The notes under the pieces are model-generated. The model was not told the DNA's origin, made no database searches, and saw nothing but the letters and a program-made list of their open reading frames with translations. A stretch of 63,526 nucleotides of DNA, filler included, from Lenisia limosa (lineage: Eukaryota > Protista > Breviatea): assembly GCA_001655205.1 (NCBI GenBank). It is 19 parts of 19 records of this genome, joined end to end, with 100 filler letters (N's around TTAATTAATTAA, not from the genome) between each part and the next. Parts side by side here need not be neighbours in the genome. Positions count along the whole stretch, not along the records: positions 1 to 3,083 come from LPNZ01006501.1; 18 more parts are not named here. One strand, 5' to 3'. The position numbers were made by a program, and so were the translations under genes. Below, piece by piece: positions 1 through 5,117 of the stretch. Position 1 is the stretch's first letter. Each line of letters opens with the position of its first letter.

Positions 1-2887
1 CCCCGAGGGCTACACTGGGAACAGTGGGGGGGGGGGTGAAGTTGAGTAAGTTAATTAGGTTGGCTTGGCAAGTCTGTGTTTTCAATTTTCGAAATAAAAT
101 CATCATAAATGTCTCCTGCTCATTTATTACAGCCTTCTAATACAGACACCCCGAGGATTAATAATTTTCCTGCCATTATTCTTTATCAAATTTTCCTTCA
201 TTAACATCATTTACTCCAGTTTTACACCTAGTTGATTTGGGCTTTTTTGTTTCATAATTTTTTACTCCCCCCAGGCGACCTTGCCGTCAGCGTAATTGGC
301 TGCACAAACGTTAACGAATGCCTCACTAACAACGGCGGATGCGACCCCGTGGTAAGCAGAGCTTCTCTTCGGTTCAAAATAAGAATAATGTTTTCGATTA
401 ACCGTCGGTTCAAAAAAAAAGACTGAAATTCTCGATAATCCTCGGAGTGAAACCAAGTGGGGTATCATTATATTACTATTTATTCTTTTAATCTATTGTG
501 AATTAATAGTATTCGATAATTCAATATCTCTTATTAATAGAGTAGGCGGCTTCGGCCAGATACAACCTCGTTGTTTTTTTTTTCTCATTGCGGTATATTA
601 GTATATTTCAGATGTATCTAGATGTGTGTAGTATACTTATTGTTTTTATATTCAAAAATTGTGAAACACGAACAATTGAAAGCAATAACATTTATATTGT
701 GATCCCCTCCCCCCCACCGTGCTGCAGAAAATACTGGCCTGGGCTTTGTTTTTGTTTTTGTTTTGTTTTTATTATTACCCTCTTGTGTTATCAGCCAACA
801 GAGTTGTTGTTTGTGCTTTTTTGTTTCATAAATTGTCTAATTTTACCCCCCCTCTCCAGGTAGCTTGCCACGATACAATCGGGTCATTTACCTGCGATAA
901 TTGTCCTGGGGGCTACTCCGGCAACTCCTATACTGCCTCATGGTATGAGGGGTACCTATGTATGATTACTGCTTCCATGAGTTCCCAAAATAAGACAATT
1001 TCCCGATAAATTCTCGATAAATATCGATATTGTGACGGTCTTTCTGTTCGTAGGGAAGCCCTATGTAGCATCCACAATAAAATGCTGGGTCACAAGAGAG
1101 AAATATAAAATTCAAATATAAATTAACAACTTATAAAATAAAAAACAACAACTCGGTGGAGGGGGGGGGGGCAANNNNNNNNNNNNNNNNNNNNNNNNNN
1201 NNNNNNNNNNNNNNNNNNNNNNNNNNNNNNNNNNNNNNNNNNNNNNNNNNNNNNNNNNNNNNNNNNNNNNNNNNNTGGTCAATTATGGTAAAACCAAACA
1301 TAGAGGTATAAGGACTCTCTATCATATTATGGCATTAGAGTTTGGGGGCCTCATGCTATGGGGGGTAAGGGGCAATAGCTTTATATGTAAAAAGACTGAC
1401 AATTTATGAAACAAAATAGGCCAAAATCAACCCATTGGAGGGCTCCTTTTATCCCCCCACCCCTACAGTTTCATAAATTTCCGGTCCCCCGCACCATTTT
1501 ACTATATTGTCTTGGTTTTTTCATAAGTTGCTGATTGACACTCGAATGTTCTCCCGCCACCCATCCAGCAGCATTTTACCGTGTAGTTTTATACTCCAAT
1601 TTACCTCCCACACACTCACTCACTCACTCACACACGCACGCACAATAATAATCCGTTCACACTTACACCTAGTGTTGACAACAATGAATGCGCTCTCAAT
1701 GACGCCGGAAATAACGTCTGCTTCTTCCCTGAGCTCTGGTAGGCAAGAGTAAGGATTGGGTGGAAGGAGTGGGTGAAAGTTAATATACCTGGAACCCCTC
1801 CAGCCATGAGTGAAAAAAAAATATCATCTGTACAGTAACCTGATAAGTCTTGTGAACCTTTACGCCAATATTCTTCATCAAAATTTTCCTTCGTATTTCC
1901 CTCCCAACAGAATTGATTTTGGGCTTTTTGTTCCATAAATTTCCCATATTACTCCCTCAGTGACAACTTTGCCGGAGGTTACAACTGCAGCTGCCGAGAC
2001 GGTTGGAGCCTTGATGAGGATGGAGTTACATGCTTGGTGAGATTGATGGTTGATTTTGGCCTTTTTTCTGTTTCATATATGTCTGGTGTGATGCGGTGTG
2101 GCAGAAGCGACTGGCCAGGGCTTTGTTTGTCTTGTTGTTATCAACCCTCGTGTGCTGTCAGCCAACAAACTTGATTTGGGCAAATGTTTTTGTTTTATAA
2201 ATATCCCATTTTACCCCCCCCCCNNNNNNNNNNNNNNNNNNNNNNNNNNNNNNNNNNNNNNNNNNNNNNNNNNNNNNNNNNNNGGCTGTACCGGCATTTC
2301 AGCGTCATGCCACGACACCGTCGGCTCTTATTCATGCTCGTGGGGGGGGGGGAGATCCTGGGGTGGCGTATATGATCCTGGGGTGGCATTTAAATGGTCG
2401 TTTGGAGGGAACGCTTGCTATTATAAGTAGGGCTCTCGGATACTATGCTCCAATATTGCATATAAGCATAAGGCGTGAACAGCTTCGGCCAGATACAACC
2501 TTTTGGTATTCCTCATCTCTCTCATAACATTTAATTTGTCTTTTAACGCAGTTGTTCCCCTATATGCTCTTCTATAAAGTTCATTTAATCTGTTGTTGCC
2601 CTGCAACACCAAATTTGTCTTACAACGCATTAGATGCCCGGACAACTATCGCCTTGAGGGGAACCACACATGCACCAAAATCGACTATTGCGCAGAGGAC
2701 ACGTCGCTATGCGATCCCCTGTTTGTGGTGAAATTTTATTGTGTGTCTGCTTAGAGTCGTAATTTTTACCTTCCCCTCAGGGCCGGGTGTATAACGCTGG
2801 AGTGCGGCGAGAGCTATTTGGACCAGTACTACAAATGTGGCAACTGTCCGGAGGGCTACTCGGGAGCAGACGGCTCCGTTTGTACCA
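1..2887 (+). CDS. Calcium-binding EGF-repeat protein (partial, multi-exon)
   Basis: Exons 1-24, 275-351, 860-942, 1673-1738, 1961-2036, 2284-2339, 2634-2720 and 2781-2887 join in phase (one junction spans an N gap): PEGYTGNSDLAVSVIGCTNVNECLTNNGGCDPVVACHDTIGSFTCDNCPGGYSGN...CVDNNECALND...CDNFAGGYNCSCRDGW. Typical cbEGF D/N-x-D/N-E-C pattern. Confidence 0.92.
228..274 (+). repeat. Module B (3' part)
   Basis: GTTGATTTGGGCTTTTTTGTTTCATAATTTTTTACTCCCCCCAG, at the acceptor. Confidence 0.85.
357..456. mobile_element. hAT-type MITE-A, rearranged
   Basis: CAGAGCTTCTCTTCGGTTC...GAGTGAAACCAA, 5 nt inside the donor at 352. Confidence 0.7.
485..620 (+). repeat. Dispersed repeat D/E
   Basis: AATTCAATATCTCTTA...CTTCGGCCAGATACAACC...TTTCTCATTGC; related pieces at 2482, 3616, 10985, 23424, 29594, 33490, 42515(-), 55690(-) and 62270(-). 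Confidence 0.8.
717..859 (+). repeat. Intron 3'-end module B
   Basis: GTGCTGCAGAA..CTGGCCTGGGCTTTG...CAGCCAACAGAGTTG...TTTCATAAATT..ATTTTACCCCCC..CAG, ending at the acceptor. Confidence 0.9.
967..1063. mobile_element. hAT-type MITE-A (A2 subfamily)
   Basis: Ends CGTAGGGAAGCCCTA; flanks TGTATGAT / TGTAGCAT (6/8). Confidence 0.75.
1856..1960 (+). repeat. Module C (3' part) fused to module B (3' part)
   Basis: ACCTTTACGCCAATATTCTTCATCAAAATTTTCCTTCG then AACAGAATTGATTTTGGGC...CTCAG acceptor. Confidence 0.85.
2093..2223 (+). repeat. Module B
   Basis: Full copy running into a C-run and an N gap before the exon. Confidence 0.9.
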
Positions 2888-3199
2888 GTGGGAGAGAGGG
2901 GGGTTCATCCAGTTACCAGGAGAAGTCTTAGTCGATTTGCTATGTGATTTCCTAAGGATAGTCGGTCAACACTTATCCCGGTCACTGTATATTGGTTTTT
3001 ATCAGAGCAACAGTTGGGTTTTGTTCAACATTAAAACCATGATATAGTACGCTGGAGTGATGGTATGCGGTGCTGCAGAAGCGNNNNNNNNNNNNNNNNN
3101 NNNNNNNNNNNNNNNNNNNNNNNNNNNTTAATTAATTAANNNNNNNNNNNNNNNNNNNNNNNNNNNNNNNNNNNNNNNNNNNNGTAAAAATAAGACTGA

Positions 3200-5117
3200 A
3201 TTTCTGGTGTGATCCAACTGATGCTGCAGTGAAATTGAGCCAATAACGATAAGCCCTGATACAGTTGACTGAGAAAAAGCTCAATAACCAGTGTAAACAG
3301 AGTAGGGAAAAGTCTACTTTTTTATCCCTCAGAAAGCAGAAACGAAAAGAAGACTCAAGCGAAAAGAAGGCTTAAAAACACCAAACAAAAAACTACCGAA
3401 ATTGGTTTGTCCGCTTCTGGAATTCTTCTGTGAGACAAGAAAACAAAAGAAAACAAAAACAAAAACAAAAATAAAAAGAAAAGAAAAAACAAAGAAAAAA
3501 AAACAAAAAAAAACAGCATTTACAGCTCGAAAATCAGAGACAGAAGTAAATAGCCTTTTTTAATGAAATATTATCCTTAAATCCAACATCTCTTATAAGT
3601 GTGATGGTGTGGACGACTTCGGCCAGATACAACCTTGTTTTTTATTTTTCATTGCTATATTGTAGATATGAGAAGTTGATTTTTAGGTACAGCAGGAAGG
3701 TCATTGTCAATGTGGTGACTCTTTTTGCCCTCGGACTTCCGCTGCCAGTGACAGTGCAAACACAGCAGTGGATAGTTTCACGTAATGTCACTGCCCAATA
3801 ACACTAATTTTCACCTTGTTTTCTCATTTAACGAAGAGGTTTTTCCAATGTTCATTTTACCAGTCTCTATGTGGCATTACCTCTCAACTCAAACCCCTTA
3901 CCACAAAAAGGCTCCAAGGCCTCACAACCACCATGCCAGGCCTCGGCTGCGGAGTGGAAGGTTGGTGATTGGGGTTTTGAAATAATACATATTTCTACAG
4001 TATTTACAAAGAAGAGTCTTATGGACAAAACTCTGTTGGTCTGTGATATCCGATTTATGTACAATCCTTATTCCGGTGGACATGGTTTTTTGTCGTGAAA
4101 TGAGATTCGATGTAATAAGAAGCGGACAGACTGTTCGTGATAACGGATGTGAGACGATAGTTACGGCGGCTGGAAATGAGACACACACACCAAAANNNNN
4201 NNNNNNNNNNNNNNNNNNNNNNNNNNNNNNNNNNNNNNNNNNNNNNNNNNNNNNNNNNNNNNNNNNNNNNNNNNNNNNNNNNNNNNNNNNNNNNNNNNNN
4301 NNNNNNNNNNNNNNNNNNNNNNNNNNNNNNNNNNNNNNNNNNNNNNNNNNNNNNNNNNNNNNNNNNNNNNNNNNNNNNNNNNNNNNNNNNNNNNNNNNNN
4401 NNNNNNNNNNGAATAATATAGTAGCTAATTAGAAATCTTAAATACATAGTGATACCATTAACAAATTACCATAATTAATTGATGACACCCCTACCCACAT
4501 ATATACATCATCTATTTAAGCATATAATATATATACATAATGTATAACTAACACATAACATCAAGACTTATTACTAGGGCTTCACTTCAGTTCAAAAAAA
4601 AAGACTGAATTTTTCAATAAATCCTCAAAACTATCGATATTTTATCGGGGTTTTTCAAACCGAAGTGGAGCCCAACTTATAACCCTGCACCCCCTGCACC
4701 CCCCACCCTTTCACTAAATTGCTGCACTAATTCGACCATCAGCGGCCTCTGACGCAATTCCGACTGACACCACTCCTTATCCGCCTGGGGTGGGGGGAGT
4801 AAACGAAGGAAATTTCGTTGAAGAATAAAGATTCTAGTTCTCTCTTTCATTTCTTCTCTTTCTCTCTCTCTCACCCTCTCTCTCTCTCTCTCTCCCTGCT
4901 ACCTTCGTGGATAGGGCAGTTCCATGGCCCTTTATAGTGGCATGGATGGTTTCCCTCTCTCGTTCGTACGACGACGACTCCAACTGCGAGGGGGGGAGGG
5001 TGAAACTAATAAGCCCAAAATCATCTATATTGGCTAGAGGAAATACATTAGGGTTAAACAACAACAAAACAAAGCTCAGGCCAGACGCAAGTAAAAAGAA
5101 GGGAATAGCTGAAGATA
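3200..5117 (-). CDS. Hypothetical multi-exon protein (partial)
   Basis: GT-AG-bounded minus-strand exons, e.g. LESSSYERERETIHATIKGHGTALSTK (~4907-4987) and ADKEWCQSELRQRPLMVELVQQFSER (~4707-4784). No family recognised. Confidence 0.55.
4575..4675. mobile_element. hAT-type MITE-A
   Basis: TAGGGCTTCACTTC...GAAGTGGAGCCCAA; flanks CTTATTAC / CTTATAAC (7/8). Confidence 0.9.
4840..4895. repeat. (CT)n microsatellite
   Basis: Directly visible in an intron. Confidence 0.9.

What the first reader, a model, noticed from the sequence alone, without database searches (positions are those of the whole stretch)
25..274. Long introns are bracketed by a 5' G-run and a 3' C-run, giving self-complementary intron ends
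Seen: most longer introns start GT plus a G-run (e.g. donors at 25, 10080, 42850, 45564, 48415, 55955, 58327; minus-strand donors near 4706, 23625, 24170, 27330, 50395, 59125) and end TTTTAC-C-run-CAG. In intron 25-274 the 5' end GTGGGGGGGGGGGGTGAAGTTG resembles the reverse complement of the typical 3' end (CTGGGGGG-GTAAAATTG). The short 30-90-nt introns (DLEC1, DDE_1 genes) lack these runs. Established: G-runs downstream of donors are hnRNP F/H enhancers in vertebrates, and intron end-pairing assists splicing in some protists. Inference: end-to-end G:C pairing could fold long introns so that a spliceosome tuned to short introns can recognise them, or the runs could be eroded TIRs of an intron-forming transposon.
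Basis: partly seen in the sequence, partly recalled or inferred. Interest (0 to 1): 0.8.

Follow-up and report, generated by a model that had tools for sequence, protein, structure and literature searches.

The report
Repeat-built introns with G/C-run ends
The G-run and C-run at the ends of this intron are real, but they belong to very abundant short repeats that make up most introns of this gene and carry their own splice signals; the evidence does not support them as a pairing device that folds long introns for splicing.

Summary
Intron 24-274 does start GT+G11 and end TTTTTTAC-T-C6-AG, and its ends are predicted to pair (9 bp). G/C runs are far above chance (three runs of G>=10 against 0.01 expected). 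They cluster at intron ends (P about 0.003 and 0.002), and G-runs always precede C-runs.

A gap-free 5.5-kb copy of the locus holds 13 complete GT-AG introns in an EGF_CA-repeat gene (10.6 introns per kb of CDS). It shows no bracketing rule: 5 introns have a 5' G-run, 4 have a 3' C-run, and only this one has both (Fisher P=1). Own-end duplexes are no better than permuted ones (P=0.92).

The introns are mosaics of high-copy repeats (summed read depth 10^3-10^5 against about 28 for exons). A module of about 55 nt ending TTTTAC-C-run-AG lies in sense orientation about 12:1 and forms the 3' splice site of 8 of 14 introns. TTAC 8-16 nt before AG (10/13 introns) is the likely branch site, and the C-run the pyrimidine tract. 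G-runs head heterogeneous repeat units.

Best reading: introner-like, transposon-derived intron cassettes. Caveats: no target-site duplications, no RNA evidence, one gene only.

The parts
24..274 (+). Intron I1 (251 nt, GT..AG, phase 1). It is the only intron of 13 with both a 5' G-run and a 3' C-run.
   Evidence: Sequence; ORF continuity; fold with terminal 9-bp stem.
26..36 (+). G11 run directly after the donor GT.
   Evidence: G>=10 runs occur 3 times against 0.01 expected.
229..274 (+). Copy of the 'M-tail' 3' cassette (TTGATTTGGGC-T6-GTTTCATAA..TTTTTTAC-T-C6-AG). It contains the likely branch site TTAC (A at -11), a C-run pyrimidine tract (267-272) and the acceptor AG.
   Evidence: Repeat families D1-D3, D5; nhmmer hit; summed read depth 20,847 in bin 207-309 against about 28 for unique sequence.
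275..351 (+). Exon 2, part of an EGF_CA repeat. The other exons in the window are 1-23, 860-942, 1673-1738, 1961-2036, (gap)-2339, 2634-2720 and 2781-2887.
   Evidence: Stop-free 407-aa spliced ORF; EGF_CA hits; unique read depth.
719..859 (+). 'U' module plus M-tail cassette forming the 3' end of intron I2 (352-859). It ends TTTTAC-C7-TCTCCAG (C7 at 846-852).
   Evidence: 72% identity over 138 nt to 2096-2220; depth 11,000-34,000; best nhmmer hit.
709..715 (+). Internal C7 run inside I2, directly upstream of the U module and not at a splice site.
966..1064 (+). Degenerate copy of a hairpin MITE ('P' family) inside intron I3 (943-1672).
   Evidence: Aligns to two copies in L074 that have 35-nt and 29-nt terminal inverted repeats; the I10 copy sits between TA dinucleotides; depth 29,544 in bin 928-1030.
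1161..1171 (+). Internal G11 run in I3, 218 nt from the donor, next to the assembly gap 1175-1275 (really 46 nt).
1398..1433 (-). The one clear antisense copy of the M module, preceded by G6 (1360-1365) and followed by C6 (1453-1458), inside I3.
   Evidence: Inverted repeats I2, I4, I9; nhmmer minus-strand hit E=1.7e-5.
1910..1960 (+). M-tail cassette forming the 3' end of intron I4 (1739-1960). The C-run has decayed to CTCCCTC.
   Evidence: depth 22,834.
2084..2223 (+). U module plus M-tail cassette forming the 3' end of intron I5 (from 2037). The window shows C10 and then N; the gap-free contig shows TTTTAC-C12-AG followed by the exon.
   Evidence: depth 219,261 in bin 2061-2163, the highest in the window.
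2340..2633 (+). Intron I6: GT+G11 (2342-2352) at the 5' end, no C-run at the 3' end (CTTACAACGCATTAG). The G-run flank is single-copy.
   Evidence: depth 24-29 in bins 2267-2472.
2721..2780 (+). Short intron I7 (60 nt). It ends with a truncated tail, TTTTTAC-CTTCCCCTC-AG, like the long introns.
   Evidence: D5.
2888..3083 (+). 5' part of intron I8 (263 nt in full): GTGGGAGAGAG+G6. The left arm of a 14-nt inverted repeat lies at 2897-2910; its partner, ...GGATGCACCCCCCT, lies 22 nt before the 3' end, outside the window. A U-module start is at 3048-3083.
   Evidence: pair I18, 93% complementary; depth 12,000-48,000.

Best explanation
The G-runs and C-runs are parts of short, non-coding, very high-copy repeat units that make up almost all of the long introns of this unusually intron-dense EGF-repeat gene.

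The best-defined unit is a directional '3' splice cassette' of about 55 nt, often preceded by a 'U' module of about 90 nt. It ends in TTTTAC (a branch-site-like motif), a C-run of variable length (3 to 12 C, acting as the pyrimidine tract) and AG. It is almost always in sense orientation, and its last base is the last base of the intron in 8 of 14 cases.

The 5' G-runs sit directly after GT (GTGGGG keeps the G at +5 and a purine at +3, so it can still serve as a donor). They head several unrelated repeat units. In a few units a G-run and a C-run are the two arms of a terminal inverted repeat.

I infer that these are introner-like elements: mobile or formerly mobile sequences that bring splice signals with them. 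On that view, many of these introns were created or rebuilt by their insertion. Run length then drifts by slippage, as in any mononucleotide tract.

Shown: the repeat nature, the orientation bias, the coincidence with 3' splice sites, and the absence of within-intron G/C pairing.
Inferred: mobility, intron creation, and the branch-site and pyrimidine-tract roles.
For: (1) Copy number. 5,491 contigs of the DNA run lie on the 3-kb window. Summed depth is 1,500-219,000 over 207-309, 413-618, 722-1133, 1340-1442, 1855-1957, 2061-2266, 2473-2575 and 2885-3083, against 18-63 in bins that are mainly exonic or unique intronic.

(2) Shared module. The 3' ends of I1, I2, I4 and I5 are mutually similar (P<=0.005 each). 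A profile built from them finds sense copies at the 3' ends of I0, I1, I2, I4, I5, I9, I11 and I13. The tally is 7 sense to 1 antisense at E<0.01, and 12 to 1 at E<1.5.

(3) Branch-site motif. TTAC with its A 8-16 nt before the AG occurs in 10 of 13 introns, against a background window frequency of 0.058 (P=1e-10).

(4) Intron density and phase. There are 10.6 introns per kb of CDS and a median exon of about 85 nt. Phases are mixed (6 phase 0, 3 phase 1, 4 phase 2) and many introns lie inside EGF modules.

(5) Polarity. In all 6 introns that contain both kinds of run, every G-run lies 5' of every C-run (chance about 1/960, from positions).

(6) Inverted repeats beyond the runs. These are seen in the I8 unit (14 nt, 93%) and in a nested GT-G10...C11-AG unit in I10 (16 nt, 94%).

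(7) Other transposons are present. A hairpin MITE with 35-nt TIRs and flanking TA dinucleotides lies in I10, and related copies lie in I14 and I3.

(8) Precedent. Introners with TIRs, TSDs and their own splice signals are documented in many aquatic eukaryotes (PMC9860276, PMC11282704).
Against: No target-site duplication flanks whole introns: the boundary direct repeat is 0-1 nt in 11 of 13, with 2 nt in I12 and 4 nt in I2. The 5' ends are heterogeneous, and most G-run flanks are not the reverse complement of C-run flanks, so a single TIR family is not shown. The flanks of the G11 runs of I1 and I6 are low- or single-copy. Summed contig depth is only a rough proxy for copy number and says nothing about where the other copies lie. 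All data come from one gene on one 5.5-kb contig. No other piece of this genome could be fetched. There is no RNA evidence for the splice sites. No presence/absence comparison with a relative exists to show that any intron is new.
Confidence: 0.5

Rival explanations
1. Pre-existing introns were passively colonised by transposable elements. On this view the runs are element ends or slippage-prone tracts, the elements did not create introns, and the cassette merely replaced or reinforced older 3' splice sites.
For: Repeat mosaics with nested insertions: I3 holds a MITE, an antisense M copy and several runs, and I10 holds a MITE inside a G...C unit. There is no whole-intron TSD. Many copies are fragments.
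Against: Passive colonisation usually favours antisense or random orientation and random position. Here the cassette is sense-oriented about 12:1 and ends exactly at the acceptor in 8 of 14 introns. A sense cassette with branch site, tract and AG in mid-intron should be harmful. Intron density is about twice that of intron-rich animals (compared from general knowledge).
Confidence: 0.25
2. The runs are independently selected splicing signals. G-runs next to the donor act as intronic enhancers or as part of an unusual donor recognised by a matching U1. C-runs act as the pyrimidine tract. Repeat origin is incidental.
For: Runs are enriched within 16 nt of the matching splice site (P 0.003 and 0.002). 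The C-run always lies between the TTAC motif and AG. G-rich 5' splice sites with a C-rich alternative U1 have been reported in a diplonemid (PMC12621601). G-run enhancers are established in vertebrates (general knowledge).
Against: Eight of 13 donors and 9 of 13 acceptors work without a run of 5 or more. About half of all runs are deep inside introns, 60-500 nt from any splice site. Run lengths of 10-14 exceed what protein-binding motifs need. This reading does not explain the conserved 40 nt upstream of TTAC or the copy number.
Confidence: 0.12
3. One reading: the 5' G-run pairs with the 3' C-run of the same intron, bringing the splice sites together so that long introns can be spliced.
For: In intron 24-274 the terminal stem is predicted in the MFE and centroid structures (-23.5 kcal/mol). 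End pairing through inverted repeats is described for Amoebophrya introners, euglenid introns and diplonemid non-canonical introns with G- and C-rich ends (PMC7789003, PMC11282704, PMC12621601).
Against: Only 1 of 13 introns has both runs (Fisher P=1, rho -0.51). Own-end duplexes are no stronger than permuted ones (P=0.92). The G-run of I1 pairs better with the C-runs of I2 and I5 (-34.3, -33.3) than with its own. The whole-intron fold is not more stable than shuffles (z=-0.5). All introns are canonical GT-AG with a branch-like motif, so no special mechanism is required.
Confidence: 0.05
4. The runs are an artefact: poly-G/poly-C produced by sequencing or assembly.
For: Both N gaps of the window abut a run (1161-1171 and 2214-2223), so runs do disturb assembly and their exact lengths are uncertain. 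The window, the Logan contigs and the ENA contig may all derive from the same reads.
Against: Runs are internal, flanked by unique sequence on both sides, and identical in length in the window and in the SPAdes contig (100% identity). They sit in register with GT/AG and the reading frame at many junctions. Dark-cycle poly-G artefacts occur at read ends, not inside contigs (general knowledge).
Confidence: 0.03

Closest known systems
Introner elements (Micromonas, Aureococcus, dinoflagellates and others; PMC9860276, PMC11282704, PMC12130899)
   Same: Short non-coding multi-copy elements that constitute introns, carry or recruit canonical GT-AG splice signals, and occur in genomes with bursts of intron gain. 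Some families have TIRs.
   Different: No TSD at the intron boundaries here. Only the 3' part is a conserved family, and the 5' parts are heterogeneous. The homopolymer G/C-run ends were not mentioned in the two introner papers I text-searched. Insertion into unrelated genes and recent gain were not shown.
Amoebophrya introner elements with inverted and direct repeats (PMC7789003)
   Same: 8-20-nt inverted repeats between the 5' and 3' ends of the same intron can form a hairpin that joins the exon ends, as predicted for intron 24-274. A MITE-like origin was proposed.
   Different: Those introns are mostly non-canonical and have 3-5-nt direct repeats at the boundaries. Here all 13 introns are GT-AG, direct repeats are absent, and end complementarity is the exception (1/13).
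Non-canonical introns of hemistasiid diplonemids with inverted G- and C-rich ends (PMC12621601)
   Same: G-rich 5' ends and C-rich 3' ends; a MITE-like origin is suggested; a C-rich alternative U1 for G-rich donors is reported in one species.
   Different: Those lack GT-AG and pair over the terminal nine nucleotides as a rule. Here the boundaries are canonical and pairing is not the rule.
Fungal introner-like elements (PMC3609843)
   Same: Multi-copy introns without TIR or TSD, longer than regular introns, degenerating with age into ordinary-looking introns.
   Different: Fungal elements are whole-intron copies with stable predicted folds. Here the introns are mosaics of modules, and the fold of I1 is not unusually stable (z=-0.5).
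Poly-G/poly-C tracts of Caenorhabditis (PMC2211496)
   Same: Long homopolymer G/C tracts that are over-represented in a genome. The abstract says they are maintained by DOG-1. That such tracts are prone to break-and-repair scars is my general knowledge.
   Different: I read only the abstract of that paper. It does not describe tracts tied to splice sites or to a repeat family.

Membership tests
Introner (transposon-derived spliceosomal intron) | The same sequence family makes up many introns, in many copies in the genome | tested here: met
   The module is shared by the 3' ends of 8 of 14 introns of this gene. Summed depth is 10^3-10^5 against about 28. Whether the other copies lie in introns of other genes could not be tested.
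Introner (transposon-derived spliceosomal intron) | Element ends coincide with the splice sites, and the element supplies splice signals | tested here: inconclusive
   3' side met: the cassette ends at the acceptor in 8 of 14 introns and contains TTAC plus a pyrimidine tract. 5' side: no conserved element end at the donors.
Introner (transposon-derived spliceosomal intron) | Target-site duplication at the exon-intron junctions (DNA-transposon type) | tested here: not met
   The boundary direct repeat is 0-1 nt in 11 of 13 introns, 2 nt in I12 and 4 nt (GGTA) in I2. Many described families also lack TSDs (PMC9860276).
Introner (transposon-derived spliceosomal intron) | Terminal inverted repeats | tested here: inconclusive
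   Beyond the runs, inverted repeats are seen only in the I8 unit and the unit nested in I10. For I1 they are not significant.
Introner (transposon-derived spliceosomal intron) | Intron positions are lineage-specific or polymorphic (recent gain) | not testable with these tools
   No relative's genome or second individual was available. High intron density and mixed phases are only suggestive.
MITE (for the 'P' hairpin element only) | Short, non-coding, with long TIRs, a TSD, and high copy number | tested here: met
   35-nt TIR at 89% (I10 copy, which sits between TA dinucleotides) and 29-nt TIR at 83% (I14 copy). Three copies align. Depth is 29,544 over the window copy.
End-pairing introns (Amoebophrya IE, euglenid and diplonemid non-conventional introns) | Complementary 5' and 3' ends within the same intron as a rule | tested here: not met
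   1 of 13 introns. Own-versus-permuted duplex test P=0.92; Fisher P=1.
End-pairing introns (Amoebophrya IE, euglenid and diplonemid non-conventional introns) | Non-canonical splice boundaries | tested here: not met
   All 13 inferred introns are GT-AG.
G-run intronic splicing enhancer (hnRNP F/H type) | G triplets or runs just downstream of the donor that raise splicing efficiency | not testable with these tools
   The sequence feature is present at 5 of 13 donors. Function needs RNA data or a minigene.

The most novel reading that the evidence does not exclude
A directional intron cassette without target-site duplication (GT-Gn ... TTTTAC-Cn-AG) multiplies in sense orientation only. It might spread by reverse splicing with reverse transcription, or by a transposition mode that leaves no duplication. 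It may have roughly doubled intron density in an organism with animal-type EGF genes. In addition, its G-runs may be break-prone tracts whose repair copies the exon end into the intron. Such duplications of 13-22 nt are seen beside three G-runs and could regenerate or shift donor sites.
Probability: 0.15. Interest if true: 0.8.

Novelty: new variant of a known kind. Interest (0 to 1): 0.5.

Why it matters
If the cassette reading holds genome-wide, this genome would be a clear case of transposon-like elements building introns with canonical signals at very high density. It would show a visible division of labour: a conserved 3' branch/tract/acceptor module and variable 5' parts. Introners are reported as rare in animals (two groups in the 2022 survey, PMC9860276). 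An EGF_CA-repeat gene with 10.6 introns per kb would be notable if the organism proves to be an animal. The negative result also matters: the attractive 'G:C clamp' model should not be carried forward without genome-wide support.

Tried and rejected
(1) Collection scans. A metagenome scan for the U-module motif gave 73 single hits, all chance (no extended similarity). Genome and viral collection scans for a 22-nt U motif gave nothing.

(2) Protein word searches. I used repeat-derived ORFs to fish other copies of the repeats. Each returned nothing or only the query's own contig.

(3) HMMER search. The longest exon, searched against 1.8 billion representatives, gave only five distant EGF hits (best 47% identity over 21 aa). 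There was no paralogue or orthologue to compare intron positions with.

(4) RNA evidence. The only RNA run of the study has no coverage of the exons, so splicing could not be observed.

(5) Structured RNA. Rfam and tRNA scans gave nothing at threshold, only sub-threshold hairpin matches on the MITE, so the U module shows no recognisable tRNA or snRNA origin.

(6) A single TIR family. I considered that G-run 5' ends might be simply antisense copies of the 3' cassette. This holds only for the internal copy at 1360-1433, and loosely (by eye) for the starts of I10 and I12. It does not hold for I1, I6 or I8.

(7) Exon bracketing. I considered a C-run upstream and a G-run downstream of an exon as the real unit. 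Two exons (E1 and E6) show it, but 5x5/14 = 1.8 such exons are expected by chance, so I rejected it.

(8) Alternative donor. A GTAAGT at 46-51 would put the G-run of I1 in the exon. It breaks the frame at the stated run length. It cannot be fully excluded, because homopolymer length is uncertain.

The organism was not identified.
Full report
WHAT IS IN THE WINDOW. The piece (1-3083) is part of a multi-exon gene on the + strand. I placed the exons by reading-frame continuity and GT-AG boundaries: 1-23, 275-351, 860-942, 1673-1738, 1961-2036, (gap)-2339, 2634-2720 and 2781-2887. Joining exons 1673-1738 and 1961-2036 gives a complete calcium-binding EGF domain (Pfam EGF_CA, 31 bits, cut-off 27, profile 1-43 of 43). 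The finding's intron is 24-274: GT, then 11 G (26-36), and at the other end TTTTTTAC-T-C6-AG.

A LONGER, GAP-FREE COPY. An exact look-up of a window ORF returned a 5,505-nt contig from an ENA metagenome assembly (L074). Its reverse complement contains the window at 100% identity. It fills both N gaps (46 and 52 nt) and adds 164 nt upstream and 2.3 kb downstream. On it I annotated 14 exons and 13 complete introns, all GT-AG. They splice into a 407-residue ORF without a stop, made of EGF_CA-like repeats (EGF_CA 34 bits for the first exon). Intron density is 10.6 per kb of coding sequence, the median exon is about 85 nt and the median intron 263 nt. Exon GC is 52% and intron GC 39%. Intron phases are mixed (my count: six phase 0, three phase 1, four phase 2), and many introns lie inside EGF modules. 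No RNA evidence was available: the only RNA run of the same study has zero depth on the exons.

THE OBSERVATION
- The runs are real and non-random. In the window there are three G-runs of 10 or more (0.01 expected from dinucleotide shuffles; 0 of 500 shuffles reach this). There are also three C-runs of 7 or more (0.28 expected; 0 of 500).
- The runs are concentrated at the matching intron ends. Three of six intronic G-runs start within 16 nt of a donor (P=0.003), three of six C-runs end within 16 nt of an acceptor (P=0.002), and none is at the wrong end.
- On the 5.5-kb contig, six introns contain both kinds of run. In all six, every G-run lies 5' of every C-run. From the positions I calculate a chance of about 1/960.
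- For intron 24-274 the MFE and centroid folds both contain a 9-bp stem between the two ends. The whole fold is no more stable than shuffles (z=-0.5).

THE BRACKETING CLAIM FAILS
- Among the 13 complete introns, five have G>=5 in the first 20 nt (I1, I6, I8, I11, I12) and four have C>=5 in the last 20 nt (I1, I2, I5, I13). Only I1 has both: odds ratio 0.42, Fisher P=1.0, Spearman rho of run lengths -0.51.
- The mean duplex energy between an intron's own first and last 25 nt is -10.6 kcal/mol, against -12.3 for permuted partners (P=0.92).
- The G-run of I1 would pair more strongly with the C-runs of I2 or I5 (-34.3, -33.3) than with its own (-23.5).

WHAT THE 3' MOTIF IS
First, TTAC with its A 8-16 nt upstream of the AG is present in 10 of 13 introns, including introns with no repeat and no C-run. 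The background window frequency is 0.058, giving P=1e-10. This fits a branch-site motif of the yUnAy type, with a short branch-to-acceptor distance. The C-run fills that spacer, where a pyrimidine tract belongs. Both roles are inferred, not shown.
- Second, the motif is the end of a conserved module of about 55 nt (TTGATTTGGGC, T-run, GTTTCATAAAT, spacer, TTTTAC, C-run, AG). The module is often preceded by a 'U' module of about 90 nt (for example 719-799 and 2084-2172).
- A profile of the module finds sense copies ending at the acceptor of I0, I1, I2, I4, I5, I9, I11 and I13, further sense copies inside I3, I5, I10 and I14, and one clear antisense copy (window 1398-1433). The tally is 7:1 at E<0.01 and 12:1 at E<1.5. 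The seeds were themselves sense copies, but the both-strand repeat searches give the same picture.
- C-run length varies from 3 to 12 among copies, as expected for a slippage-prone tract. Even the 60-nt intron (2721-2780) ends in a truncated tail.

THE INTRONS ARE HIGH-COPY REPEATS
- Laying the contigs of the DNA run on the window placed 5,491 contigs on 3 kb. Bins that are mainly exonic or unique intronic have depth 18-63.
- The module-bearing bins have summed depths of 20,847 (207-309), 11,402-33,866 (722-927), 29,544 (928-1030), 22,834 (1855-1957), 219,261 (2061-2163) and 12,095-47,897 (2885-3083).
- Summed depth is only a rough proxy, but it implies hundreds to thousands of related copies.
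- About half of the window lies in such bins. In contrast, the flank of the G11 run of I6 is single-copy and that of I1 nearly so (depth 24-29 and 79.5).

WHAT THE G-RUNS ARE
- The sequences just inside the G-runs are heterogeneous: TGAAG.. (I1), AGATCC.. (I6), TTCATCC.. (I8), TCAGAGG.. (I12), CTGTT.. (I11).
- With the runs held as blocks, the 5' end of I1 is not significantly similar to the reverse complement of any 3' cassette (P 0.19-0.72).
- Two units do have inverted repeats that continue beyond the runs. One is the I8 unit: left arm at window 2897-2910, partner outside the window, 14 nt, 93% (pair I18). The other is a unit nested in I10 that reads ..TAATGT-G10 ... C10-AGATTA.. (16 nt, 94%; pair I11). 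That nested unit looks like a complete small intron, with GT, CTAAC, a C-run and AG, and it holds a MITE insertion.
- So G...C can be the two arms of an inverted-repeat unit, but this is not general. GTGGGG retains a purine at +3 and G at +5, so from general knowledge of U1 pairing a G-run preceded by GT is a usable donor.

OTHER MOBILE DNA IN THE SAME INTRONS. A hairpin MITE lies in I10 (L074 1658-1761; 35-nt TIRs, 89% complementary, between TA dinucleotides). A second copy lies in I14, where it abuts the donor (L074 117-218; 29-nt arms, 83%). A degenerate third copy lies in I3 (window about 966-1064). Rfam gives only sub-threshold hairpin matches on it.

MECHANISM, AS FAR AS IT CAN BE COMMITTED TO
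- The most economical reading is that these are introner-like elements: mobile or once-mobile non-coding units that carry their own splice signals. Only sense insertions survive in genes, and the element end becomes the splice site. This accounts for four things: the sense bias, the coincidence with acceptors, the copy number and the extreme intron density.
- It matches the general description of introners (PMC9860276, PMC11282704).
- The weak points are these. No whole-intron target-site duplication was found: the boundary repeat is 0-1 nt in 11 of 13 introns, 2 nt in I12 and 4 nt in I2. The 5' parts are not conserved. Only one gene was seen. No comparison shows that any intron is new.
- The main rival, old introns later colonised by the same repeats, cannot be excluded. 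It fits the orientation and end-coincidence data less well.
- A purely functional reading (independent enhancer and tract) does not explain the conserved 40 nt upstream of TTAC, the copy number, or the many runs deep inside introns.

COMPARISON WITH KNOWN SYSTEMS
- Closest in kind are introners. Closest in appearance are the Amoebophrya introners with end-pairing inverted repeats (PMC7789003) and the hemistasiid diplonemid introns with inverted G- and C-rich ends (PMC12621601). Both of those are largely non-canonical and pair as a rule. Here the boundaries are canonical and pairing is the exception.
- Text searches of two large introner surveys found no mention of homopolymer or G-rich ends. 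This is weak evidence of novelty, because the organism is unknown to me.

LIMITS. Everything rests on 5.5 kb of one gene plus a depth profile. Homopolymer lengths are uncertain. The window, the Logan contigs and the ENA contig may all come from the same reads.

Noticed in passing
window 935-954 and 1348-1367; L074 1842-1854/1784-1796; L074 1501-1521/1463-1483: In three introns the last bases of the upstream exon, together with the start of the G-run, are repeated inside the intron. I3: 20 nt at 90% identity, 413 nt apart. I10: 13 nt, perfect, 58 nt apart. I11: 21 nt, perfect, 38 nt apart, flanking a 17-nt insert that carries the donor GT and a G6 run. These could be long variable target-site duplications. 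They could also be templated-insertion scars of break repair at G-tracts. They are unexplained.
   Followed up: partly
window 966-1064; L074 1658-1761 and 117-218: A hairpin MITE family. The I10 copy has 35-nt terminal inverted repeats and lies between TA dinucleotides; the I14 copy has 29-nt arms. In I14 its inverted repeat starts right after the donor GT. Depth is about 29,500 over the window copy.
   Followed up: partly
window 1175-1275 and 2224-2283: Both N gaps of the window abut a homopolymer run (G11 and C10). The gap-free contig shows that they are really 46 and 52 nt. The second hides the true 3' end of intron I5 (TTTTAC-C12-AG) and 47 nt of exon.
   Followed up: yes
whole gene (L074 215-5424, minus strand): Very high intron density: 13 introns in 1,222 nt of coding sequence, exons of 56-117 nt, mixed phases, many inside EGF modules. 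The last exon ends in D-V-D-G-D-G-V-G-D, reminiscent of a thrombospondin type-3 repeat, but Pfam gave no hit.
   Followed up: partly
L074 1560-1617 (intron I10): A C11-AG lies 45 nt upstream of the inferred acceptor of I10. It would be an in-frame, stop-free alternative 3' splice site that adds 15 codons.
   Followed up: no
window 2354-2392: A tandem duplication of a 20-nt unit (GATCCTGGGGTGGC..) lies immediately after the G11 run of intron I6.
   Followed up: no
L074 3053-3074/3162-3183 and 5298-5316/5427-5445: Inverted repeats also span exons: an upstream C12-AG and a downstream GT-G11 flank exons 1 and 6 (19-22 nt, 82-84% complementary, mostly the runs). The count matches chance expectation.
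   Followed up: partly
window 547-591, 998-1035, 2090-2167: Short contigs of the poly(A) RNA run match the repeat modules at 90-95% identity but not the exons. Copies of the repeats therefore occur in that RNA library; the tool notes that DNA may be present in such a library.
   Followed up: no
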